64,000 nt of DNA from the sequence record MN445185.1; one strand, 5' to 3'. A program made the position numbers and the translations under genes. Positions 1 to 20,465 of this stretch are shown in pieces. Each line of letters starts with the position of its first letter. Position 1 is the stretch's first letter. The notes beneath the pieces were generated by a model. It was given only the letters and a program-made list of their open reading frames with translations, was not told the DNA's origin and searched no databases.

Positions 1-80
1 TATTAAGATCTTAAAACGCGTGCGGGCGCGCGCGTGATCCTTATTAAGAGATCGTGATCGGACGGAAGACCGAGATCGGG
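1..80. repeat. GATC-dense, CG-rich palindromic segment
   Basis: GATC at 7, 36, 50, 56 and 74; TTAAGATCTTAA palindrome (3-14 region); ACGCG..CGCGT inverted repeat; TATTAAGA repeated at 1 and 42. Confidence 0.45.
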
Positions 81-207
81 TACCCTGTGTATTTTTTACG
101 TGGTTTCCCTATCGTGTGTTCAGACCACCACTCGATGTCCAAAAACCCATAGCTTCGGTGGTCGCCTCCCTGGTCGGTAGACTCTGACAAGTCGACCCAC
201 AACACCA

Positions 208-232
208 ACCCGTCCGGGGACGGATTTTTATT
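208..232 (+). terminator. Intrinsic terminator-like hairpin
   Basis: CCGTC-cggg-GACGG followed by ATTTTTATT. Confidence 0.45.
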
Positions 233-287
233 CCAACGACAAGCTCCACGAAAATCCCCGCAGAGGGACTCACTGCTGTGTGACTCA

Positions 288-327
288 CCGGCTCCTGGAC
301 GCCTACGCCTCGAGCCGGTAATTTTTT
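288..327 (+). terminator. Intrinsic terminator-like hairpin
   Basis: CCGGCTC(288-294)/GAGCCGG(312-318) followed by TAATTTTTT. Confidence 0.5.
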
Positions 328-354
328 GATTACGTGAGTTTGTTGTTATATGCG

Positions 355-930
355 AATAGCGATTGACCGCGCCAATGGTCCAATCACTTTTAAACCCTGC
401 ACGCTAGGGCTCCAAGTCCTGGGACTGATACCCAGGACGCTTTTTCGAAAATACCTACCGTGGTGTCTTCGACAAAGCGCAATCTAACACTGCGTGATTT
501 ATTATGTTCTGGAAAACTTTCGCCGTGGAACAGAACCGGTGAGCGTCGGCGGGGATTCCGACAATCACCACCCATTCAGGTACTCGGTAGATAACCGACC
601 TGCCGACGGTGCTACGTCGGGCGTAGTTCGGTTTGCGAGAGTGTCGAGAAAGTCGACTGCGCACCCATGACAAAATCCGAGTTGACCGTGGCAGCGCCAG
701 AGGACTGGGCAGCGGAGAGACGTCGTTGAACTTACCTCCGATAGTTATCGCTGATTCCGCTCTGGCGTCGGGCCAAAACTGATTCGAATTCGGCGTTGCG
801 TCGAAAAGGGGTCTGCGTGTAGAACCGCAGACTTGGGGGATAACTCCAAAGTGGGGTGATCGGATCTTGACGGCTCGGAACAGACGAGAGGGGTGGGTAC
901 TCCCGTTGTGAAACGCCAGTACCTGGCTGA
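355..930 (+). ncRNA. Candidate large structured non-coding RNA (~580 nt); family unknown, strand inferred
   Basis: No credible ORF. Stems: 416-423/431-438, 584-588/594-598 inside 577-580/599-602, 603-608/615-620, 694-702/760-768, 811-817/826-832, and a GNRA hairpin 904-915 inside 896-900/919-923. Confidence 0.5.
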
Positions 931-984
931 TTAAAATTTACAGATTCTGCGTGAGGTATGATAAACCAAACGGAGAATTAAACC

Positions 985-1560
985 ATGAACTTGTATCGCA
1001 TCGGGTTTTACCGGAACGAGGTACCAGAATCGGTTTTGGTTGTCTTAGCCGAAAACGAGGAGCAGGCCAAATCCTTCTGGCCGGTTAGCGCAGAGCGTAC
1101 AGCGGTTGCGTGCTGCTACGACGGTCCAGTTGCCGCAACGGATGTCGCTGCAGGCGTAGTCCTGAAGATGGGCCGATGGGAAGATTACTCCCATCCCGGT
1201 TTGGAGTTTGTTTCCGAACCTGCCAGACATTCCTGGGAATTTCCCTCAGGCAACACCGAGACGTATTTCGGATTTCAGGTTAAACAACCTTCGACGCTCA
1301 AACTGTACCTGGTGTACAGCGACGCCGCTACCGAAGACTACGTCGATTCCGGAATCATCGTCGGGGCAACAACCCCTGCTGCGGCATTCGCACATTGGGA
1401 CGGTGATAAACCCGGAATCGTTTCGGTCTGTGAGCTACCACTTGAAGCCGGTTTGGTTACGAACATCAAGTGTGAGCAAGGCCAGGAGCTGACTTGGATC
1501 CGCCAGGATTACCTGACGGAAACGACATTCGAGTACACACCGAGGAAGGTGACCCAATGA
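985..1560 (+). CDS. Hypothetical protein with two copies of a small domain also found in 2283-2525
   Basis: 191-aa ORF, SD GGAG, stop overlaps next start (ATGA). Confidence 0.8.
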   Translation: MNLYRIGFYRNEVPESVLVVLAENEEQAKSFWPVSAERTAVACCYDGPVAATDVAAGVVLKMGRWEDYSHPGLEFVSEPARHSWEFPSGNTETYFGFQVKQPSTLKLYLVYSDAATEDYVDSGIIVGATTPAAAFAHWDGDKPGIVSVCELPLEAGLVTNIKCEQGQELTWIRQDYLTETTFEYTPRKVTQ

Positions 1561-2048
1561 CGACGATAGCGTTCGACGGAAAAGTCTTAGCTGCTGACGG
1601 TCAGCTGACCCGCGGGTCGAATATCTGCAACCTGAACACCCAGAAGTTATTCATCTGCCCTTCTGACGAGGAATGGTGGATTACTGGTGAACGGATTGTG
1701 GCGTTCGGAGTAAGCGGTGACATCACAGGACAGTTGGCCCTGCTGGAAACGGTCCGCTTGAGACCCGGCTACAAGGGGTTAACACAAAGCTCGCAGTTAC
1801 CTGCGAAGATGGATTTTACTTTCCTGATGCTTTTGGCCTCAGGAAAAGCGATAGTCGGCGGAAAACGTGAAGACGACGTGACGTTGTGGTGGAGTGAAGC
1901 CACACCACCTCTGGCAACCGGAAGCGGTTACGAGTATGCGTTGGGTGCGATGAAGATGGGCGCGAATGCGGTTCGTGCTGTTGAGATTGCGTCCGAATGC
2001 GATATCTACACCGGTGGTGAGATTAGCACTTACGAACTACGGAGGTGA
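1557..2048 (+). CDS. HslV/proteasome-beta-like Ntn (Thr) protease
   Basis: Start at ATG 1557 gives MTTIAFDGKVLAADGQLTRG; Thr1, Asp13 and Lys29 have the same D-K spacing as HslV D17/K33; ATGSG and CDIYTGG motifs. Confidence 0.75.
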   Translation: MTTIAFDGKVLAADGQLTRGSNICNLNTQKLFICPSDEEWWITGERIVAFGVSGDITGQLALLETVRLRPGYKGLTQSSQLPAKMDFTFLMLLASGKAIVGGKREDDVTLWWSEATPPLATGSGYEYALGAMKMGANAVRAVEIASECDIYTGGEISTYELRR

Positions 2049-2051
2049 ATC

Positions 2052-2102
2052 ATGCGGGAGTCAGAAGCACGCAAGCTTGACCCCATCAATCGCCTGCGAT
2101 AA
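2052..2102 (+). CDS. Possible 16-aa small ORF (MRESEARKLDPINRLR)
   Basis: Strong SD GGAGGTG (2041-2047) before ATG 2052; TAA at 2100-2102. Confidence 0.3.
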   Translation: MRESEARKLDPINRLR

Positions 2103-2140
2103 CGGGGTAGCGCATCCGTATAAACACGTTCAAGAATTCT

Positions 2141-2216
2141 AGGAAAGTGACGCAATTGGTAGCGTACCGGTCTCCAAAACCGGCTGTTTAGAGTTCGAGT
2201 CTCTACTTTCCTGCCA
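2141..2216 (+). tRNA. trnW: tRNA-Trp (CCA)
   Basis: Acceptor AGGAAAG/CTTTCCT; anticodon arm CCGGT-CTCCAAA-ACCGG; T arm TAGAG-TTCGAGT-CTCTA; encoded 3' CCA; 76 nt. Confidence 0.97.
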
Positions 2217-2282
2217 CATTTAGCCAACAAGGCCATGATTCAAAGCAGAATGACACCGAATGTCTAACTGCGGAGAATAATC

Positions 2283-2525
2283 ATGAACTTGTATTTGCTA
2301 GAACGAACTGACGATATCGGGTATGATGAATTTGATTCCATAATCGTGGCGGCTCCTACGGAGCAAGCCGCGTGTGCAATTCCTCCCGACCGTGGTCATT
2401 GGATGGACTGCCGCTGGTTACCGAAAGAGCGCTGGGATGAAGGGCTTACCCTGACCGTTACTCTTATCGGTACTACGCACTATCCTGCTGGGACCGTCGT
2501 TCATGAATCGTTCAATGCTGGCTAA
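2283..2525 (+). CDS. Small hypothetical protein, paralogous domain to 985-1560
   Basis: 80 aa, SD GGAG; MNLYLL...SIIVAAPTEQAA pattern. Confidence 0.8.
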   Translation: MNLYLLERTDDIGYDEFDSIIVAAPTEQAACAIPPDRGHWMDCRWLPKERWDEGLTLTVTLIGTTHYPAGTVVHESFNAG

Positions 2526-3300
2526 ACAGTGGGCTTCGGCCCACTAACCCTATTCGAGCCGTGATACTTACTCAGATTGTGCGGGTTGATGTCCCGCATG
2601 AGCCGGTAGCAGCTCAGACCTACGGTAGACCAATAAATCCGTAGCAGCCAGGTACACAAAGCACCAGGTCGCTTGTACAGGATGCTGGGTATCTGACCGG
2701 TCATAACCTCATTCGATACGAGACACGTTTATGCATGAAATACTCCAGTACATCAGGATGTTGATTTCCAACATCCGGTTCTGGGTATTCAGTCATGTTT
2801 GGTTTACAGGCGATGGGTTTTCCCGTAAGGGCCCCACTTACAGACTGGCGTCTCCACGACAACCGTCCCTAGGGGACAGGCAAGCACCGGCCCATTAAGC
2901 CGCTACGCTACGCCTGTAAATCCACAATCTGATAACCGAATGGGATTGAGTTCCCAGTGTTAGGGTGACTGTGTGTCACCGTAGGCGCGGTACCTCATAC
3001 GGCCGGTACGCCACGAATGTACGTGATAGCGGGTGGTGCTTGGAGACGCTAAGACCTGACCTTACGGACAGGCTCAGAAGAAGAAGTCCATCACCTGTAT
3101 TCAGAAATGAATTTAGGTTAATTATTGGAAGTGGCGAAATCACTTACGTGATAACTTAGTAGTATGCAACGAACAATACCAGAGTGACTTTACGAGGTTA
3201 CTGTGGTATATGTCGGTGCGCCGGGCAACGTGTTGCCGCAGATAAGCCCGAGGGAGCTGAGTGCACTAACACACGCCGGGATGCACCGGCACCTTACAAC
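2526..3300 (+). ncRNA. Candidate structured ncRNA region (one or several RNAs)
   Basis: No credible ORF. Stems: 2528-2545 (UUCG loop), 2580-85/2593-98, 2620-25/2639-44, 2756-63/2769-76, 2803-12/2911-20, 2964-69/2975-80, 3212-19/3283-90. Confidence 0.5.
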
Positions 3301-3370
3301 GGCTTTGTAGCTCAGGTAGGTAGAGCAGCCTCTTCGAGGAAGGTCGCTGGTTCGAGACCGGTCAAAGCAA
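3301..3370 (+). ncRNA. tRNA-like RNA lacking an anticodon loop
   Basis: Acceptor GCTTTG/CAAAGC; D arm GCTC-AGGTAGGTA-GAGC; variable loop AGGTC; T arm GCTGG-TTCGAGA-CCGGT; anticodon arm only 13 nt (CCTC-TTC-GAGG); no CCA. Confidence 0.75.
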
Positions 3371-3450
3371 GAGCAGCGAAGTTAGAGGAATTAACACCCG
3401 ACTCATAATCGGATATTTCGACGGTTCGAATCCCTGCCACTTGCTCGCCC
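3371..3450 (+). pseudogene. Degenerate tRNA-Met/Ile2 (CAT)
   Basis: Anticodon arm CCGA-CTCATAA-TCGG; D stem GTTA/TAAC; GGTTCGAATCC T-loop with broken T stem; acceptor GAGCA/TGCTC; ends GCCC rather than CCA. Confidence 0.65.
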
Positions 3451-3452
3451 TA

Positions 3453-3736
3453 TTTGTGTTATCCTTATCCCGAAGGCATTCGAAATAAGACGCGTATCCA
3501 CACACGGGTCAAGGATAACACGAACCACTTCCGCGGTCACCGTGTCCATTGCCGCCTACCTGCATGGGCTGTCCTCCGACACGGTGACTTCGGGCCAAAT
3601 TACAGACCAGGGCCGTTTGGGTTTTTCTTACGCATCCGTCCAGAGCCACCTCGAGCCCTGGTTTGTTCTCCCTTTTCTGTTCCTAGTTAGCCAACTAAAT
3701 CAATTAAGCCTGGTGCGTTGCCCTGGGAACAGAAAA
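3453..3736 (+). ncRNA. Array of four long-stem, large-loop hairpins
   Basis: Stems 3456-66/3511-21, 3536-46/3578-88, 3603-13/3655-65 and 3673-86/3723-36 (11-14 bp); loops 31-41 nt; stems unrelated in sequence. Confidence 0.65.
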
Positions 3737-3828
3737 ACTTATTCGGTTACACACCGAACCCACCCACGAGGGATATGTCGTGGACTACCAATAGAAGCAG
3801 CAATAGTAGAAGTAAGAAGGAAAGCAAC

Positions 3829-4650
3829 ATGTTTACAGTTAAACGTGTGATTGATGGTGACCGCATTATTACCGAACATGAAAAAGTTCGTATCGGTGAC
3901 CGTAAGTCTCGTGTATTCCGCGAGGCATTAAAAATGCTCGAGAACGAGCGATTCGACATTGTTGTCGATGATGAAAAGTTAGCCCTTAATCCGGGGTTAA
4001 AACGCGTTGCCCCTGATGTGCCTGATCCGAACACCATGCATTTGTCTGACTACTGCAGCTGGTCGCACAGATTATATAAAAGTCAGGTTTATGCACACAC
4101 GTATTTGCGGCAGCTTTTCCCCAACCTTATTATCCCCGATTTGGAAACGGTCGAGGTGTTTAACTGCAACGCACGCGAGTTTATTAGCTACGTGCTAGAT
4201 AATAAGGGCAATGCTATCTTGGTACTGGACACAAGTTCCAGTATACCTGATGCTGTGGCTAGCATACGTGGTGAAATCATCGGTTACGGTACTCCCCCAG
4301 AGAAATTAGGCTGGTACAAACCATCTCCTGATAGCGACATGGCGATCATTGTCTACACTCAGGAAGAACTGCAACAAGTCGAATTAGAGCCTGGCCCATC
4401 TATCGAGTTCACTGATGTCCAGGAGCAGTCGCAGTGGATTAACGGTGAGTCTGTTGTTACTGTTTTAAAAGGCGCTCGCCCTGGCGACCGGTCAGTCGAT
4501 GAACTGATTGGCGCAATGTGCATCGAAGAAGAATCTGGATACGATCCTGATAACCAGATCAGTACCGGTGCGTTGTACGAACTGTTTTATAAAGGCGACG
4601 AAGTCTACGTGGTTAACTCTCACGGTAAGACTACCGACGCCCTTCGCTGA
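3829..4650 (+). CDS. Hypothetical protein
   Basis: ORF 3718-4650; better start is ATG 3829 after AAGGA; the upstream extension overlaps the hairpin array. Confidence 0.85.
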   Translation: MFTVKRVIDGDRIITEHEKVRIGDRKSRVFREALKMLENERFDIVVDDEKLALNPGLKRVAPDVPDPNTMHLSDYCSWSHRLYKSQVYAHTYLRQLFPNLIIPDLETVEVFNCNAREFISYVLDNKGNAILVLDTSSSIPDAVASIRGEIIGYGTPPEKLGWYKPSPDSDMAIIVYTQEELQQVELEPGPSIEFTDVQEQSQWINGESVVTVLKGARPGDRSVDELIGAMCIEEESGYDPDNQISTGALYELFYKGDEVYVVNSHGKTTDALR

Positions 4651-4740
4651 ATTAGCTAACGCCCAGTAGCTATGTTCCTGACGATTAGCCCTCGTCTGAC
4701 CTTGTAAGACCTTGTAGATTTACATGCCAACACCAGGGAA

Positions 4741-4793
4741 GTCCTCACTCTTCGGAGTGAGGACAACTCTTTTATTTTTTTTTGTATTCCAAA
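4741..4793 (+). terminator. Intrinsic terminator
   Basis: GTCCTCACTC-TTCG-GAGTGAGGAC, with a T tract starting a few nt downstream. Confidence 0.85.
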
Positions 4794-4800
4794 TATACAC

Positions 4801-4815
4801 AGATAGATATTACCT
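4801..4815 (+). promoter_or_regulatory. Putative early promoter motif
   Basis: AGATAGATATTACCT, one of 8 related copies; contains TATTAC as in phiKZ early promoters. Confidence 0.65.
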
Positions 4816-4874
4816 AAGTGAGATGAGAAAGCCTCATCTGAATTCTCCCAACTCGACTATAAAAGGTATGCATC

Positions 4875-5825
4875 ATGTACAGACCAAGTAATCCTAGCGC
4901 TATTGAAGGATTAAACCAGGATGGCTTCAGCCTCGCAGAAGCAACCCGCATTCGACCTTTCTTACCTCGCAGATTCTTCCCTTTCGGTTCGTTATACAGA
5001 ACGAATTTCGACGCTTGGGAAGCGATACGTGCTGTAAAAGATGCACTACAGTACAAGAACTTCGAATTCCGATTTGTTTTCAAATGGGGCAACGGCGAAT
5101 TGCTCCACCACTTCGGATTCCAACAGAACGAGTTCATTGAGTATACCTCACCTACGTACCACACCAGGTTCTTAAGTATCGAATTCGTTCGCCATTTCGG
5201 CGATGCACTCTTTACGGAACGGGCTACAGATGAAAACCACGGACGTAGGCTGATGTTAACGAACGGCGCACTGCGCATCAAGATGAATCGTTTACGGGAA
5301 GCGTATAACCAGCTTATCAATCCTGAACCGGTAATGTTTCCAACTGTAGCTGATTTGAACATTACACCGCTCCAGTTACCTGTGGATGTGGATAGACCGA
5401 TTCTGGCAATCCACGCTCTCCAGGCAGGCTATGCAAACTGGTATAAAGAGCACAGTCTCCCGAACACCAGATTGAACATCGCACCGTTTGAGTTATGCCT
5501 GTTCTTAACGTTACGCAAACAACTCGAGCCAGAAAACTTAGACTTGCGTTATCTGGCTAAAACAGATAGCGGTAGTTACTACCCAACGACCTGGATGCTA
5601 GCGGCTGTACTACCCGGCGGTGAAATTATCGGTAACCCTGTCACCGATGTTCAACAGTTACCATCACCGTTAGCACCACCGAAGGATTCAATCTATCCAT
5701 ACGCTTCGTGGTACGCGAGCAGTATTGGCGTGAGATGGTTAATGTTACACGTTCCTGAAGAGGTCTATAATTTATTCCCGCATGAGCAATGGCTCCGTGC
5801 GTATGAAAATCGGTTTGGTTGGTAG
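4875..5825 (+). CDS. Hypothetical protein
   Basis: 316-aa ORF between promoter motif and terminator. Confidence 0.85.
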   Translation: MYRPSNPSAIEGLNQDGFSLAEATRIRPFLPRRFFPFGSLYRTNFDAWEAIRAVKDALQYKNFEFRFVFKWGNGELLHHFGFQQNEFIEYTSPTYHTRFLSIEFVRHFGDALFTERATDENHGRRLMLTNGALRIKMNRLREAYNQLINPEPVMFPTVADLNITPLQLPVDVDRPILAIHALQAGYANWYKEHSLPNTRLNIAPFELCLFLTLRKQLEPENLDLRYLAKTDSGSYYPTTWMLAAVLPGGEIIGNPVTDVQQLPSPLAPPKDSIYPYASWYASSIGVRWLMLHVPEEVYNLFPHEQWLRAYENRFGW

Positions 5826-5836
5826 TCGATGCTTTT

Positions 5837-5870
5837 GAGGGAACTTCGGTTCCCTCTTTTTTTTCTTTTT
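5837..5870 (+). terminator. Intrinsic terminator
   Basis: GAGGGAAC-TTCG-GTTCCCTC followed by T tract. Confidence 0.9.
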
Positions 5871-5907
5871 TCACGACTGCCTCAGAATCTTATAGGAGGA
5901 AGTTACC

Positions 5908-6324
5908 ATGATTACGCAGTGCTATTACCAGACGCAAGATTTATTTAAAGCATTGGAAGAAAATAAGTTACCCACGACTTTAAGACCGCAGTGCAGTTAT
6001 TCAAGAATGCTTGCAAGTGAGGTCTTTCCGGTGCTAATGCAGTTGCCTCAATTCCAACCGTGGCTCGACTCGCTAGATGTGGTAGATGTTGTGGCTATCT
6101 ACACTGGGTCAGACACACCAACAATAAATACAAGCGAGTGTTTATCCCGTAGCGAATCGTCGGCGTTAAATGAAATGCCGCAGCTAATGCCTTCTTTATT
6201 CGATTCGATGTGCGCTGCAGTTATGCAGAAACGACTACCTTATGAGGAAGTATTCGCCATTGTGTTAGACAGCATCCACGCAATGAATTATAAACACTAT
6301 AAAACCCTCGGAACCTTACACTGA
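5908..6324 (+). CDS. Hypothetical protein
   Basis: 138 aa, SD AGGAGG. Confidence 0.85.
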   Translation: MITQCYYQTQDLFKALEENKLPTTLRPQCSYSRMLASEVFPVLMQLPQFQPWLDSLDVVDVVAIYTGSDTPTINTSECLSRSESSALNEMPQLMPSLFDSMCAAVMQKRLPYEEVFAIVLDSIHAMNYKHYKTLGTLH

Positions 6325-6391
6325 CTTTTTTACGGCAGGCACCTATCTTGTAGGGAGTCTGTGCTGTAATAGATTCCAAAGGAGATGCTCG

Positions 6392-6781
6392 ATGAAAAAC
6401 AAACTGCGTCCGCTGGACGTGATTATGGCGCATCCGGATACCCTCAAGAAAATTAAAGTGGTCAACGAACTTGACCGTGGTCTCCTGGATACAATTCAAT
6501 GGGGTTTTACTTTCCACCCCGATGAAGAGAACAACACGCGTCAATTAGATGTCTGCGACGGTGTAGAAATTGATTGGTCTTCTAACGAAGGCTTCAACGA
6601 TGTCGTCGATTATGTCAAACAAGCCACCGTTCCACCTGTGTTTCCCGTAGCGGGTTTAGCGGAACACACAATTTCTCTCCGCCGACTGGTTAACGCTCAA
6701 CCGGAAATCGTGCGTGAAGGTGAGGCGTGGACGTCAGGTATTACCCATCATCTTAAGGATGTGCTGGGTGTTGCCGGTTAA
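6392..6781 (+). CDS. Hypothetical protein
   Basis: 129 aa, SD AAGGAG. Confidence 0.85.
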   Translation: MKNKLRPLDVIMAHPDTLKKIKVVNELDRGLLDTIQWGFTFHPDEENNTRQLDVCDGVEIDWSSNEGFNDVVDYVKQATVPPVFPVAGLAEHTISLRRLVNAQPEIVREGEAWTSGITHHLKDVLGVAG

Positions 6782-6832
6782 AAAAGAAGAAGTACCTCTA
6801 CTTGCGTAGAGGTACGGAATCTTTCTTTTTTT
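6781..6832. terminator. Bidirectional terminator
   Basis: GTACCTCTAC-TTGC-GTAGAGGTAC with A tract before and T tract after, between convergent genes. Confidence 0.85.
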
Positions 6833-6833
6833 G

Positions 6834-7646
6834 TTACGACTTGAAGCGTCCACCGTTCATGTAGTTCCAACGGTTTCCGATGTTGTCGTTGTGGACCAGA
6901 CAACGCTGCATTTTCGGCAAGGTGTCTTCGAACATTTGACCTGCGTCCGAGTAACCTTCAATAACGTTTCTGAAGGCACCGAACTCCATACCATTTTCCA
7001 GTTTACCAGAGTCCATGTCGAAGATCATGGTGTTGTAAATATATTGCTTAACAGCCATGACTGCCAGCTCACCTACAACCGGATAGAATGCTGGTTTGAT
7101 TTCGTTCATCTCCTGGGATAGTTCGTACTTCACCACGAGTTTGGTAGAGTAAACGAACATGCCTGGGTCTTTGATACGAATGGTATTCGGACCGAGCACT
7201 TCGACTTCTGGTGAGGCGATGCGCGGCATCGCGGATTGACTATCAACCACTTGTTGAGTGGACGCCAGTACGCCAGAGGTGGCACCGTCCAGATATGAAC
7301 CTGCTGGAGGCATGGTGTACGCCTGTCCGGCAACGGGTGTTACAGAAATGTGGGCATCCAGAATAGGACGACCGCCTGTTTTGATGTCGTCGAGATAATA
7401 CACGCGACTGAAATAATCTTGCGTGTCGTTATCCCAAGGGACACCTTGCAAATCTACTTCTTGATACTGCCCCATTCTCGAGATTTCAGGGACCAGAATC
7501 TCACGAATAACACGTTGTTGGATTTCGTTATCTACAGAGCTTGCAATTCCCAGTAACTTGAGGTTTTCTGGAACAAAAGCCGCCTGTAGAATCGGGGCAG
7601 GGATATGCTGTCTGATTTTACGCAGACAGTAGTCGATAACATTCAT
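6834..7646 (-). CDS. Conserved phiKZ-like probable virion protein (SPN3US gp8 position)
   Basis: ORF 6834-7676; ATG 7646 (MNVIDY) follows SD AGGAG; upstream TATG late-promoter motif at 7682-7679; identity from synteny. Confidence 0.8.
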   Translation of the reverse strand: MNVIDYCLRKIRQHIPAPILQAAFVPENLKLLGIASSVDNEIQQRVIREILVPEISRMGQYQEVDLQGVPWDNDTQDYFSRVYYLDDIKTGGRPILDAHISVTPVAGQAYTMPPAGSYLDGATSGVLASTQQVVDSQSAMPRIASPEVEVLGPNTIRIKDPGMFVYSTKLVVKYELSQEMNEIKPAFYPVVGELAVMAVKQYIYNTMIFDMDSGKLENGMEFGAFRNVIEGYSDAGQMFEDTLPKMQRCLVHNDNIGNRWNYMNGGRFKS

Positions 7647-18741: not shown

Positions 18742-20109
18742 GTGAGAAAGGTACCAAAATTCTACGGAATATCCGGCCGGTTGGTTAGTCAGGATAACTA
18801 TTTGTCCGATTTGCAAATAGAAGCTGCTGCCAAAGGTATTAAACCACCCACTATTATTAACGATGTCGCCGTTAACGGGGATGCGATCGAGGTTGCTGAA
18901 CTTATCGATCGCATGGTACAGAACAGAATCGTTGACGAAGAACTGAACTCTGCACCGATTTGTAGTTTGGATTGTCCGGCACCGATCGCGCATCGTTACA
19001 ATCTCGGTTGTAAGTGTCCGACGTGTGGCTATGTTGTAACTGAACATCGAATTGAATCCGATGTCTGGTTACGTGCACCTGATGAAATGGGTAACTTCGT
19101 CAACCCACGATTCTGGGCAATGTTCAATGCTTTCTTTAATAGCAAGTTGAAGAAGTTTGAACGTAACAAGGTCACTATCGAACGCGGTAATGACTTGATG
19201 ATGTGGATGATTGACCCGTATTACCGTATAGAAGAACCAGACGGTAAACGCGCACATGCTGTGAAACGTGTATTGGAAGAACATGGTTTCGTTCGTGGCT
19301 TGCGCAATCTGGTTGATAACCACGTTAGTATCTTTAACATCCTTACCACGCCAGAAGCCTGGAAGGAAATCTTCGCACCTAATCGGCATAACGCCGCTGA
19401 AGGTGAACGCTTACGTTTACAATGGAAGGAGCTATTCGAAACGCAACGACACGCATTCTTCCCAAGACACTTACCGCTAATCTCCTCTAAACTTATCGTT
19501 ACTGAGGAAGGTCGTCGTGGTGTCATGGTAGACCCAGTGTTCACGGGTGCTATTGATGCGGTGAAAAATATCGCGTTGCTCTATACGCGGCGTAAAGCGA
19601 TCGAACCACGTTTTCTGATTAGTCGTGCTTTGAAAGCGAACCGTCAGTTAACGTACTTCCACATGGACTTCCGTCGTGAGTCTATGGAAGGTAAACCGGG
19701 TGACTATCGTGCGAAATTGGGTTCTACCCACATCCCGTTCGGTGGTCGTGCAACCATCTCACCTATCTCAGAACCACATGATGCCTGGAAGTTAAAAGCA
19801 CCATGGCGTTGGATGGTTGGGTTGATGTCGACCCACATCGAGAACAAACTGCTACGACGCGGTTATTCGTCACGGCAGTGTGAACGTATCGTTGCGAAAG
19901 CGGCAATGCAGTATGACCCGCTTGTAGATGAAATCTTTAAAGAACTGATTCGTGAATCCCCAGGCGGTCTTGGGATCATGGTCATACCGCTACGTAACCC
20001 AACGCTGGTACAGTTGTCTATTCAAACGCTGTACATCGATGAAGTTGTTACCGATGTTAACCAGTGTTCGCTGCGTATCTCTGACCGTGTGATCAAGATG
20101 GCTAACGGT
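18742..20109 (+). CDS. Non-virion RNAP beta' N-terminal subunit (phiKZ gp55-like), exon 1
   Basis: Zn-binding C-x3-C...CKCPTC; GKPGDYRAKLGS..GGRATI; RNPTL; ends MANG at the 5' splice site. Confidence 0.92.
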
Positions 20110-20465
20110 TCGAAAAGAGCCCCATCGGACGGGAAACCTCTGATGCGTATTCTCCTGAAATGCTGGGAAACCCTAAAGCGTATCTACCAGAAATGGGGAC
20201 GAAAGTCTGAAACAACAGATACGATGGCCTACGCTAAACAATACTGCTAACGGTTGTGATAATGGGTAATCAGCAGCGAAGCCTCGTGAGAGGAACGTTC
20301 AACGACTATCGCTGAAATGCGAGTAGGGGTCCCAGTGGACTTCGAAGTGGGAGAACACCTAAGGCGATAGCTATGGTGAAGATATAGTCTGTGCCTTATC
20401 GAGAGATAAGGAGGGTGTCTTAGCACACCTGCTGTATACGGAAACGGTATACGGTGGACAAACAG
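20110..20465 (+). mobile_element. Group I intron (IA-type core), 356 nt, no homing endonuclease
   Basis: P AAATGCTGGGAAA (20158-70); Q AATCAGCAG (20268-76); R TTCAACGACTAT (20298-309); S AAGATATAGTC (20379-89); P7 GACTA/TAGTC; P3 TTCTCC/GGAGAA; P1 with U-G pair at 5' splice site; terminal G at 20465. Confidence 0.93.

What the first reader, a model, noticed from the sequence alone, without database searches (positions are those of the whole stretch)
2141..3800. Locus-level model: a tRNA-punctuated ncRNA operon
Seen: tRNA-Trp, structured block, anticodon-less tRNA, pseudo-tRNA-Met and hairpin array lie in one orientation with no U-tract terminator until 4741. Inference: one transcript in which functional and degenerate tRNAs serve as cut sites for host processing enzymes and release several ncRNAs. 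This would explain why non-decoding tRNA shells persist.
Basis: inference. Interest (0 to 1): 0.66.

Follow-up and report, generated by a model that had tools for sequence, protein, structure and literature searches.

The report
Jumbo-phage tRNA-array stub with structured RNAs
This stretch of a 240-kb E. coli jumbo phage is the shrunken remnant of a tRNA gene array that its relatives keep, and it still holds one working tRNA, two small protein genes, a tRNA-shaped RNA that cannot decode, a damaged unusual tRNA, and several conserved folded RNA elements that match no Rfam family.

Summary
The window is the start of Escherichia phage vB_EcoM_EC001, an SPN3US-like jumbo phage.

- tRNA-Trp lies at 2141-2216.
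- A structured block lies at about 2865-3102. It has 15 compensatory base pairs across 19 sequences and no significant Rfam match.
- An anticodon-less tRNA shell, "X", lies at 3301-3370.
- A tRNA(CAU)-like element lies at 3371-3446.
- A hairpin array lies at 3453-3783, with z = -6.
- All are on the + strand, and no + strand terminator is seen between 439 and 4741.

**Corrections:**
- The locus is not purely non-coding. It holds a conserved 80-aa gene, a conserved unannotated 55-aa ORF, and the CDS at 3829-4650.
- It is the stub of a cassette conserved across four genera: leader RNA, then 0-17 tRNAs, then X, tRNA(CAU), tRNA-Asn, then the hairpin trailer.
- X has been non-decoding in all 14 lineages examined, yet its stems covary, so the shape is under selection.
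- The "pseudo-tRNA-Met" is an atypical tRNA with an 8-bp acceptor stem. It is intact in relatives and has a broken T stem only in EC001.

Co-transcription and cutting at tRNA boundaries fit the anatomy but could not be tested, because no RNA data were available. The closest precedents are the T4 tRNA cluster and plant-mitochondrial t-elements.

The parts
2141..2216 (+). tRNA-Trp(CCA), canonical, with encoded CCA
   Evidence: ARAGORN. Rfam 63.6 bits. Cloverleaf minimum-energy fold. Present in all relatives.
2283..2525 (+). Conserved small protein gene (80 aa, phrog_5444, function unknown)
   Evidence: tblastn gives 47-99% amino-acid identity in all genera. PHROGs E = 5.9e-36.
2528..2545 (+). 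GC-rich hairpin (UUCG loop) just after the ORF80 stop, with no U tract
   Evidence: Fold. The terminator scan does not call it.
2578..2730 (+). Conserved non-coding stretch upstream of ORF55. The annotated minus-strand CDS 2522-2704 is probably spurious.
   Evidence: 79-85% nucleotide identity to SPAsTU and pEa29, and a patch at 2582-2664 conserved in Machinavirus. The minus-strand frame is not kept in pEa29.
2731..2898 (+). Unannotated 55-aa ORF. Its 3' end and TAA stop lie inside the first helices of the leader RNA.
   Evidence: Open in 15 genomes of 4 genera, with a W..H(V/Y)W(F/L)(T/S)G motif and a QAPAH end. phrog_26199 E = 6e-5. Substitutions are spread almost evenly over the three codon positions, so coding is likely but not proven.
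2865..3102 (+). Conserved structured leader RNA of about 238 nt, with these parts: hairpin 2865-2877; nested helices 2876-2917; conserved single strand ACAAUCUGA 2924-2932; T-loop-like hairpin 2941-2956; hairpin 2964-2980 with a UGUGU loop; swappable module 2984-3013; 3' domain 3025-3102.
   Evidence: Alignments A1 and A2 of 12 and 19 sequences. RNAalifold finds 15-17 pairs with double changes. 97.1% of cells are paired. The covariation score is 0.287 against 0.126 for shuffles (0 of 500 reach it) and 0.04-0.07 for slid controls. A G.U pair is invariant, which places the fold on the + strand. No Rfam family reaches threshold.
3103..3294 (+). AT-rich stretch with an invariant TAGTAGTATGCAACGA (TATG at 3163-3166), followed by two strong hairpins (3176-3209 and 3211-3291)
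   Evidence: z = -4.4. Almost invariant in SPAsTU and pEa29, although the flanks are only 76-79% identical. Coordinates.
3301..3370 (+). X: a tRNA-shaped shell. It has a 6-bp acceptor stem with a G1.A72 mismatch, a D arm and a T arm (GGUUCGAGACC). The anticodon arm is replaced by a 4-bp stem with a 3-nt loop. One A follows it.
   Evidence: Rfam 33.6 bits. Fold. Acceptor 6/7 and T stem 5/5 pairs in 14 lineages with 6 different acceptor sequences. The inner part varies from 32 to 76 nt.
3371..3446 (+). Atypical tRNA(CAU), Ile2/Met type, with an 8-bp acceptor stem. In EC001 its T stem is broken.
   Evidence: Across the family the cloverleaf is 95% paired and 12 of 21 pairs show double changes. 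Relatives score 30-47 bits in Rfam and are annotated tRNA-Ile or tRNA-Met. The EC001 copy has no Rfam hit and does not fold as a cloverleaf. Its exact sequence occurs in 1 of 40 records.
3453..3783 (+). Trailer of six hairpins: HA1 3453-3524, HA2 3530-3594, HA3 3602-3666, HA4 3673-3736, HA5 3742-3758, HA6 3764-3783
   Evidence: z = -6.0. The stems of HA1, HA2 and HA4 differ in sequence between lineages but stay paired. The apical sequences CCGCCUACCUGCAUGGGCUG and GCCUGGUGYG are conserved.
3829..4650 (+). CDS (273 aa, phrog_17697, function unknown), the last gene before the terminator
4741..4785 (+). Intrinsic terminator: 10-bp stem, UUCG loop, long U tract
   Evidence: and the sequence.
4804..4815 (+). 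Copy of the recurrent promoter-like motif TAGATATTAYCT. It marks the start of the next transcription unit.
   Evidence: 21 matches in the window against 3.3 expected. 7 of the 8 + strand sites are intergenic, and all 8 lie 29-59 nt upstream of a + strand ORF start.

Best explanation
The region is the reduced form of a cassette conserved in SPN3US-like, Machina-, Erskine- and Wellington-type jumbo phages.

**Order of the cassette**
- HslV-like gene
- tRNA-Trp
- 80-aa gene
- 55-aa ORF
- structured leader RNA of about 238 nt
- a variable array of 0-17 tRNAs, reshuffled with the help of HNH homing endonucleases
- a terminal module of tRNA-shaped X, atypical tRNA(CAU) and tRNA-Asn
- a structured hairpin trailer
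- a 273-aa gene
- terminator

**State in EC001**
- The internal tRNAs are absent.
- tRNA-Asn has been deleted.
- The tRNA(CAU) has a broken T stem.
- Only tRNA-Trp can decode.

**Proposed mechanism (inferred, not shown)**
- The whole stretch is transcribed rightward as one or a few long middle or late transcripts by the phage's non-virion RNA polymerase.
- Host RNase P cuts at the 5' ends of tRNA-Trp, X and tRNA(CAU). 3' trimming enzymes and RNase E finish the ends.
- This separates the mRNAs, the tRNA, the leader RNA and the trailer.
- X is kept because its acceptor/T-arm shape serves as a cleavage handle next to the unusual 8-bp-acceptor tRNA.

**What is shown:** the elements, their structures, and their conservation and covariation.

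**What is inferred:** co-transcription, the cleavage sites and the role of X.
For: - **Identity and synteny:**
- **Relatives carry intact tRNAs at this site:** 5-17 tRNAs lie between the leader RNA and the X-CAU-Asn module.
- **Breakpoints in EC001:** they fall at 3294/3295 and at 3446-3453, with tRNA-Asn retained in MET_P1.
- **Homing endonucleases:** HNH genes sit inside the array in phage 1252 and pEa29.
- **Leader RNA covariation:**
- **tRNA(CAU) covariation:**
- **X structure kept in 14 lineages:** the spacer to the next element is always 1 nt.
- **Tight spacing in relatives:** the leader RNA ends 13-14 nt before tRNA-Gly.
- **Transcription signals:** no + strand terminator between 439 and 4740, and no promoter-like motif inside 1-4803.
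- **Polymerase class:** in PhiKZ the phage tRNAs depend on the non-virion polymerase (PMC12571901).
- **Precedent:** tRNA-like t-elements are RNase P and RNase Z signals in plant mitochondria (PMC1920247).
Against: - No transcript or RNA-end data could be obtained.
- Middle and late promoters of such phages are poorly defined (PMC7598289), so the absence of a recognisable promoter is weak evidence.
- The invariant AT-rich TATG region at 3103-3175 may be an internal promoter.
- The G1.A72 mismatch of X lies at the expected RNase P site, and its effect is unknown.
- The EC001 copy of the tRNA(CAU) is damaged, which shows that at least part of the locus is dispensable or decaying in this phage.
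- Substitutions in the 55-aa ORF are spread almost evenly over codon positions, so the boundary between mRNA and leader RNA is uncertain.
Confidence: 0.5

Rival explanations
1. The tRNA-like elements are plain relics. They are leftovers of a decaying tRNA array with no present function, and they persist only because too little time has passed.
For: - EC001 has lost tRNA-Asn and lacks the internal tRNAs.
- Its tRNA(CAU) has 3 broken pairs and no cloverleaf fold.
- The array is turned over by indels and HNH endonucleases.
Against: - X is non-decoding in all 14 lineages of four genera, yet it keeps 6/7 acceptor and 5/5 T-stem pairs through at least 6 different stem sequences.
- The G1.A72 mismatch and the 1-nt spacer are invariant.
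- The tRNA(CAU) shows 12 pairs with compensatory changes.
- Together these point to long purifying selection on shape. Decay fits only the EC001 copy of the tRNA(CAU).
Confidence: 0.15
2. There are several independent transcription units. The leader RNA with ORF55, the tRNA-like pair, and the downstream gene with its hairpin 5' UTR each have their own middle or late promoter. The elements are then not released from one precursor.
For: - An invariant AT-rich stretch with TATG at 3163-3166 lies just upstream of X. In PhiKZ, late promoters are defined only by TATG at the start site (PMC7598289).
- Another TATG lies at 2727-2730, before ORF55.
Against: - In Erskine- and Wellington-type relatives the leader RNA abuts the first tRNA (13-14 nt).
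- X abuts the tRNA(CAU) (1 nt).
- No terminators separate the elements.
- TATG is too short a motif to be evidence by itself.
Confidence: 0.3
3. The leader RNA and the hairpin trailer are cis-acting untranslated regions. The leader would be the 3' UTR of ORF55 and the trailer the 5' UTR of gene 3829-4650. They would control stability, translation or export of those mRNAs, and would not be free ncRNAs.
For: - The ORF55 stop codon lies in the loop of a conserved helix of the leader RNA.
- The trailer ends about 45 nt before the start codon at 3829.
- HA4 is also kept in front of the downstream genes in Erskinevirus.
Against: - The leader RNA keeps its place at the head of the tRNA array even where other genes (parB-like) are inserted after it.
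- The trailer follows tRNA-Asn in relatives, so RNase P or 3' processing would separate it from upstream RNA in any case.
Confidence: 0.25
4. X, and perhaps the leader RNA, is a tRNA mimic that acts in trans. It could be a decoy or sponge for a host tRNA-binding factor such as an anticodon nuclease, a modification enzyme or a processing enzyme. It could instead help handle phage tRNAs.
For: - X keeps the tRNA elbow and the acceptor/T-arm stack but lacks an anticodon.
- The halves of X are 85-96% identical to ordinary elongator tRNAs of relatives.
- The array in relatives is rich in Tyr, Asp, Asn and His tRNAs. From my own knowledge, these are targets of known tRNA-cleaving toxins.
Against: - No test was possible.
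- An anticodon-nuclease decoy would be expected to keep an anticodon loop, which X lacks.
- No partner protein is evident in the locus.
Confidence: 0.1

Closest known systems
Bacteriophage T4 tRNA gene cluster with its two stable non-tRNA RNAs (species 1 and 2) and the segB homing endonuclease.
   Same: - tRNAs and small stable RNAs sit in one orientation in a phage.
- Neighbouring units are separated by 0 to a few nucleotides and would be matured by host RNase P and the CCA-adding enzyme.
- A homing endonuclease lies inside the cluster. The equivalents here are the HNH genes in relatives.
   Different: - This cassette carries protein genes.
- It has a leader RNA of about 238 nt unrelated to the T4 RNAs.
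- It has a tRNA shell with no anticodon loop.
- It has a hairpin trailer.
- In EC001 only one decoding tRNA is left.
- Transcription would be by a phage multisubunit polymerase in a nucleus-forming phage.
Plant-mitochondrial t-elements (PMC1920247)
   Same: - They are non-canonical tRNA-like cloverleaves with a conserved GGTTCRANYCC T arm. X has GGTTCGAGACC.
- They are embedded in long transcripts.
- Cleavage by RNase P and RNase Z creates the ends of neighbouring RNAs.
   Different: - They occur in organelles, not phages.
- For X, no RNA ends have been mapped.
- X always sits directly 5' of one particular atypical tRNA.
tRNA-Ile2/Met(CAU) genes of phages
   Same: - The anticodon arm CCCGACUCAUAAUCGG of 3397-3412 is identical to that of many phage tRNA(CAU) genes.
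- Relatives annotate the element as tRNA-Ile or tRNA-Met.
   Different: - The acceptor stem has 8 bp, often with a bulged U.
- The D arm is non-standard.
- Some relatives carry a long variable arm.
- No CCA is encoded.
- The T stem is broken in EC001.
Large ornate phage-associated ncRNAs found next to tRNA genes (GOLLD, ROOL). The association with tRNA genes rests on my own knowledge.
   Same: A conserved structured RNA of unknown function encoded beside phage tRNA genes.
   Different: - No Rfam match to either family.
- The leader RNA is much smaller, at about 238 nt.
- It was found only in one clade of phages of about 240 kb.

Membership tests
tRNA (Rfam RF00005), element 2141-2216 | Score at or above the gathering score, a cloverleaf, and a 7-nt anticodon loop with U33 | tested here: met
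   63.6 bits against 29. ARAGORN calls Trp(CCA). Cloverleaf minimum-energy fold.
tRNA (decoding), element X 3301-3370 | Rfam score at or above the gathering score | tested here: met
   33.6 bits against 29.
tRNA (decoding), element X 3301-3370 | 7-nt anticodon loop that presents an anticodon | tested here: not met
   The loop is 3 nt on a 4-bp stem. ARAGORN makes no call. In 14 lineages the arm is a variable hairpin or a loop without U33.
tRNA (decoding), element 3371-3446 | Rfam score at or above the gathering score and an intact cloverleaf | tested here: not met
   No tRNA hit even at E up to 10. The T stem has 3 of 5 pairs and the minimum-energy fold is not a cloverleaf. Homologues in relatives do pass, at 30-47 bits.
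tRNA (decoding), element 3371-3446 | Anticodon loop CUCAUAA with U33 and a purine at position 37 | tested here: met
   Seen in the sequence at 3401-3407. In 15 of the 17 family sequences the loop reads CUCAUAA; Machina (CCCAUAC) and Asesino (CCCAUAA) have C at position 33.
T4-type tRNA operon with embedded stable RNAs | Units abut each other (0 to a few nt) in one orientation, with no terminators between them | tested here: met
   X and the tRNA(CAU) are 1 nt apart. The leader RNA and tRNA-Gly are 13-14 nt apart in relatives. No terminator between 439 and 4740.
T4-type tRNA operon with embedded stable RNAs | One precursor transcript, with RNase P-dependent release of the units | not testable with these tools
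t-element (tRNA-like processing signal) | Non-canonical cloverleaf with a conserved T arm GGTTCRANYCC | tested here: met
   GGTTCGAGACC at 3347-3357. Cloverleaf fold. Motif as defined in PMC1920247.
t-element (tRNA-like processing signal) | The ends of the element coincide with mapped RNA termini | not testable with these tools
   No RNA data were available.
Known structured RNA families (group I intron, RNase P RNA, tmRNA, YrlA, GOLLD, ROOL, riboswitches), for the leader RNA 2865-3102 | Match to the family covariance model | tested here: not met
   There are no hits at gathering score and none at E up to 10 apart from the L17 leader below. YrlA scores 13.9 bits against 69, and only in a relative, across X.
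L17 ribosomal-protein leader (RF03132), module 2961-3011 | Score at or above the gathering score, and a position upstream of rplQ | tested here: not met
   22 bits against 34.9, E = 0.46-5.3. The context differs. The module is replaced by unrelated hairpins in about half of the lineages. No similar sequence was found in E. coli genomes.

The most novel reading that the evidence does not exclude
The 238-nt leader RNA and the anticodon-less shell X may form a dedicated RNA-based system for handling tRNAs in nucleus-forming jumbo phages. One possibility is a scaffold that docks tRNA elbows or recruits RNase P. That would order the maturation or export of array transcripts made inside the phage nucleus. 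Another possibility is a mimic that diverts host tRNA-targeting factors. On this reading the system is kept even in phages such as EC001 that have lost nearly all array tRNAs.
Probability: 0.08. Interest if true: 0.85.

Novelty: new variant of a known kind. Interest (0 to 1): 0.55.

Why it matters
**tRNA-shaped cut signals in a phage.** A tRNA shape used as a cut signal is well documented in organelles. From my own knowledge it is also known in some animal viruses and in the phage T4 tRNA cluster. Here one shell has been kept non-decoding over four genera of jumbo phages, always glued to one unusual tRNA. That makes the idea directly testable in SPN3US, a phage that can be manipulated genetically.

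**New RNA elements.** The work defines three conserved RNA elements that match no Rfam family: the leader RNA and trailer hairpins HA2 and HA4.

**Annotation corrections.**
- Spurious CDSs: 2522-2704 (minus strand), 2971-3159, and SPN3US_0003.
- A missed 55-aa ORF.

**Turnover of tRNA arrays.** The tRNA arrays of these phages are modular cassettes with fixed ends and a fast-changing interior.

**Wider relevance.** Nucleus-forming phages separate transcription from translation. How their tRNA and mRNA precursors are processed is an open question, and this locus could help to address it.

Tried and rejected
- **RNA evidence.** No whole genome is held for this window.
- **Literature.** No transcriptome or ncRNA study of SPN3US-like phages was found.
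- **Long-range pairings.** Two 10-nt pairings, 2572-2581 with 2923-2932 and 2803-2812 with 2911-2920, were rejected. About 3-4 such matches are expected by chance in 2.7 kb, and the first is not kept in SPAsTU or pEa29.
- **Hairpins as a repeat family.** The trailer hairpins do not form a repeat family.
- **Sigma-70 promoters.** The scan gives matches at chance level, and this phage family does not use host RNA polymerase anyway (PMC7598289).
- **PhiKZ-like early motif ATATTAC.** It is not enriched. The phage's own recurrent motif was found by k-mer counting instead.
- **Known identity for the leader RNA.** Group I intron, RNase P, tmRNA, YrlA and riboswitch were considered, and none has Rfam support. 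A resemblance I noticed by eye to RNase P J11/12 and to group I R/S elements could not be tested and is not claimed.
- **L17-leader resemblance.** It stays below threshold, and no counterpart exists in E. coli genomes.
- **Wider family search.**
  - The exact-pattern scan of IMG/VR returned 10 hits, four of them contigs whose lengths match phages already sampled, the rest contigs of about 240 kb or fragments.
  - The pattern scan of metagenomes returned 83 hits, of which only 9 were true members by nhmmer. All 9 come from the same phage clade.
  - Both scans need conserved exact words, so more distant members cannot be excluded.
- **Covariance model.** None was built. It would have searched only sequence already in hand.
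Full report
**Identity of the window.** Positions 2100-4800 are 100% identical to Escherichia phage vB_EcoM_EC001 (MN445185, Seoulvirus SPN3US, 240,200 bp). They are 92-98% identical to about 30 SPN3US-like Salmonella, Escherichia and Proteus jumbo phages. Window coordinates equal record coordinates. This phage family carries its own multisubunit RNA polymerases (PMC7598289), so sigma-70 promoter scans are not informative here. The scan gave chance-level matches in any case.

**Checking the observation.**
- tRNA-Trp(CCA) at 2141-2216 is canonical.
- 3301-3370 passes the Rfam tRNA threshold (33.6 bits against 29). Its anticodon arm is a 4-bp stem with a 3-nt loop, and ARAGORN does not call it.
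- 3371-3446 has a CUCAUAA loop but gives no tRNA hit, even at E up to 10.
- The hairpin array at 3447-3828 folds at -137.4 kcal/mol against -103.9 for shuffles, z = -6.0.
- 3094-3300 gives z = -4.4.
- The only + strand terminator-like sites in 1-7000 lie at or before 438, at 4741-4764, at 5837 and at 6887.

The elements and their common orientation are therefore real.

**The stretch also contains protein genes.**
- ORF 2283-2525 (80 aa, phrog_5444, E = 5.9e-36) is conserved at 47-99% amino-acid identity in every relative.
- An unannotated ORF at 2731-2898 (55 aa) is open in 15 genomes of four genera, with a shared W..HxW(F/L)(T/S)G motif and a QAPAH end. It also hits phrog_26199.
- Substitutions in that ORF are spread almost evenly over the three codon positions. 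It is therefore probably, but not certainly, translated.
- Two annotated CDSs are not kept as reading frames in relatives and overlap conserved RNA structure, so they are probably spurious: 2522-2704 on the minus strand and 2971-3159.

**The locus is the stub of a tRNA array.** Every relative fetched shows the same order: HslV-like gene, tRNA-Trp, the 80-aa gene, the 55-aa ORF, a conserved non-coding block, a tRNA array, and then the homologue of gene 3829-4650. The relatives cover Seoulvirus, Machinavirus, Erskinevirus and Wellingtonvirus.
- The array holds 5-17 tRNAs in most of them: Tyr, Glu, Asp, Ile, Gln, Ser, His, Phe, Gly, Leu, Met and Asn.
- Against SPAsTU and pEa29, the EC001 sequence is collinear up to 3294. 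It then jumps over the internal tRNAs to the last module and resumes after 3446-3453.
- Within the SPN3US group there is a 264-nt indel exactly at 3294/3295, flanked by ACAATGG repeats.
- tRNA-Asn is kept after the tRNA(CAU) only in MET_P1.
- An insertion of about 860 nt carrying an HNH endonuclease sits at that place in phage 1252. pEa29 has another HNH gene inside its array.

The cassette thus has fixed ends and a fast-changing interior.

**The structured block is a conserved RNA.**
- A block at about 2865-3102 is found at 70-80% identity in all genera.
- On 19 non-identical sequences (A2), RNAalifold predicts 44 pairs. Of all cells, 97.1% are paired, and 15 pairs show changes on both sides.
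- The covariation score is 0.287, against 0.126 for column shuffles (0 of 500 reach it) and 0.04-0.07 when partners are slid.
- One G.U pair is invariant and others are frequent. The folded strand is therefore the + strand.
- The RNA begins inside the last codons of the 55-aa ORF, and the TAA stop sits in a hairpin loop.
- It contains an invariant T-loop-like hairpin, a hairpin with a UGUGU loop, a swappable middle module and a long 3' domain with a purine-rich internal loop.
- No Rfam family matches it. The only near-hit is the L17 r-protein leader, at 22 bits against a gathering score of 34.9. That hit falls on the middle module, which about half of the lineages replace. No similar sequence exists in E. 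coli genomes.
- Pattern scans of IMG/VR and of metagenomes recovered it only on contigs of this phage clade of about 240 kb, always 5' of the tRNA array.
- In Erskine- and Wellington-type genomes it ends 13-14 nt before the first tRNA.

**X, the anticodon-less shell.** In 14 lineages an element homologous in position to 3301-3370 lies directly 5' of the tRNA(CAU).
- It always has 6 of 7 acceptor pairs with a G1.A72 mismatch.
- The T stem always has 5 of 5 pairs, closing a TTCRANN loop.
- A single A follows it.
- It is usually preceded by ACAAT.

The acceptor and T stems differ in sequence between lineages but remain paired. There are six acceptor versions, for example GGCTTTG/CAAAGC, GGCTCCG/CGGAGC, GGTTTCT/AGAAAC and GGTCTTT/AAGGAC.

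The inner part ranges from 32 to 76 nt. It is a short capped stem in EC001, a long GAAA-capped hairpin in SPAsTU, and in others a 7-nt loop without U33. The two halves of X are 85-96% identical to ordinary elongator tRNAs of relatives. X is therefore a tRNA-derived shell whose shape has been under selection for a long time, although it never decodes.

**The "pseudo-tRNA-Met".** Its homologues (A4, 17 sequences) fit a cloverleaf with an 8-bp acceptor stem that often has one bulged U.
- 95% of cells are paired, and 12 of 21 pairs show compensatory changes.
- The covariation score is 0.322 against 0.120 for shuffles.
- The anticodon stem-loop is nearly invariant. It is the same as in many phage tRNA(CAU) genes.
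- Relatives score 30-47 bits and are annotated tRNA-Ile or tRNA-Met.
- Four lineages carry a long variable arm.
- The EC001 copy combines the 5' T-stem strand of the SPN3US type with the 3' strand seen in phage 1252. This leaves 3 of 5 T-stem pairs and one further acceptor mismatch. It does not fold as a cloverleaf, whereas the SPN3US, MET_P1 and pSal-SNUABM-04 copies do.
- The exact EC001 sequence occurs in 1 of 40 records.

This element is thus an atypical tRNA that is probably functional in relatives and is recently damaged, or mis-sequenced, in EC001.

**The trailer.** The six hairpins are HA1 3453-3524, HA2 3530-3594, HA3 3602-3666, HA4 3673-3736, HA5 3742-3758 and HA6 3764-3783. They follow the position of tRNA-Asn.
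- The stems of HA1, HA2 and HA4 have different sequences in SPAsTU, pEa29, Caitlin and the Erskineviruses but stay paired.
- The apical sequences are conserved: CCGCCUACCUGCAUGGGCUG in HA2 and GCCUGGUGYG in HA4.

**Transcription signals.**
- K-mer counting revealed a recurrent motif with core TAGATATTAYCT and an extended form of roughly CAGATAGATATTATCTnnGTGA. It gives 21 matches against 3.3 expected.
- All 8 + strand sites lie 29-59 nt upstream of a + strand ORF start, and 7 of the 8 are intergenic. This fits the AT-rich early promoter motif described for such phages (PMC7598289).
- One copy lies at 4804, just after the terminator. None lies in 1-4803.
- The last 5 kb of the record hold only a weak match.
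- Upstream, the previous gene ends with a terminator at record 239435-239460. About 1.75 kb without annotated genes follows.
- In PhiKZ the phage tRNAs depend on the non-virion polymerase (PMC12571901).
- By inference, the locus is a middle or late unit. Its promoters cannot be recognised from sequence.
- The invariant TAGTAGTATGCAACGA at 3160-3175, in an AT-rich context, is a candidate internal start.

**Interpretation.** The best reading is a mixed mRNA, tRNA and ncRNA transcription unit that is matured at tRNA and tRNA-like boundaries.
- The anatomy fits this: tight abutment of the units, no terminators, and a tRNA shape kept under selection.
- There are precedents. Plant-mitochondrial t-elements are documented (PMC1920247). 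The T4 tRNA cluster with its stable RNAs and segB is cited from my own knowledge.
- Co-transcription, the cleavage sites and the function of X, the leader RNA and the trailer remain inferences.
- Four rivals stand: pure relics, separate promoters, cis-acting UTR elements and a trans-acting tRNA mimic. They are listed with what would refute each.

**Verdict.**
- The finding is a new variant of a known kind. It adds three conserved RNA elements that match no Rfam family, and several annotation corrections.

Noticed in passing
window 1-984, plus the last ~770 nt of the record (L117:4262-5001): About 1.75 kb without annotated genes lies between a terminator (record 239435-239460) and the first gene at 985. 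The stretch 440-984 folds with z = -2.7. A patch at 785-941 is 76-81% identical in Machina-, Erskine- and Wellington-type phages. The record end is an extremely AT-rich block flanked by alternating GCGCGTGCGC runs. This may be an origin, a promoter region, or more ncRNA.
   Followed up: partly
window 4804, 7768, 16655, 16748, 25205, 26621, 30364, 58729 (+ strand): The recurrent motif TAGATATTAYCT (extended form about CAGATAGATATTATCTnnGTGA) gives 21 matches against 3.3 expected. All 8 sites lie 29-59 nt upstream of a + strand ORF start, and 7 of them are intergenic. It is probably the early (virion RNA polymerase) promoter of this phage.
   Followed up: partly
window 20090-20411 (+): A group I intron is called by Rfam (RF00028, 69.4 bits, full-length model match). 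The host gene was not examined.
   Followed up: no
L002:3355-3618, inserted at window 3294/3295: A 264-nt element is present in Proteus phage 7, MET_P1, SPFM4, 1252 and SPLA1a and absent from EC001 and SPN3US. It is flanked by ACAATGG repeats. Its first ~80 nt fold as a four-way, cloverleaf-like junction with a 7-bp closing stem but no T loop (z = -2.1). It has no Rfam match.
   Followed up: partly
L029:1874-2413 and L007:3867-4403: HNH homing-endonuclease genes (PF13392, phrog_59) are inserted inside the tRNA array. In phage 1252 the gene sits where tRNA-Asn lies in MET_P1. In pEa29 it sits after tRNA-Tyr.
   Followed up: yes
window 2522-2704 (-), 2971-3159 (+), 2731-2898 (+); L001:2940-3176 (-): These look like annotation errors. 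The two annotated EC001 CDSs, and SPN3US_0003, overlap conserved RNA structure, and the two EC001 CDSs are not kept as frames in relatives. The conserved 55-aa ORF is not annotated in EC001.
   Followed up: yes
window 2984-3013: The middle module of the leader RNA (GGCGCGGUACCUCAUACGGCCGGUACGCC) matches most of the apical sequence of the predicted L17 ribosomal-protein leader (RF03132), but the score is only 22 bits against 34.9. It occurs patchily in three genera and is swapped for unrelated hairpins in the other lineages.
   Followed up: partly
L010:4292-4388, L014:4967-5063, L015:4219-4314, L016:11533-11628: In ChrisDB, pEa_SNUABM_9, pEa_SNUABM_4 and one UViG, the 8-bp-acceptor tRNA(CAU) carries a long variable arm (7-bp stem). 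This is a class II-like feature that might change its charging identity.
   Followed up: no
L118-L213 (IMG/VR contigs, many between about 20 and 70 kb): The anticodon arm CCCGACUCAUAAUCGGAU is shared by at least 120 viral contigs. The commonest type (TGCTGGTT-TA-GCT...AACCAGCA-C) also appears to have an 8-bp acceptor stem and no encoded CCA. A wider class of unusual phage tRNA(CAU) genes may exist.
   Followed up: partly
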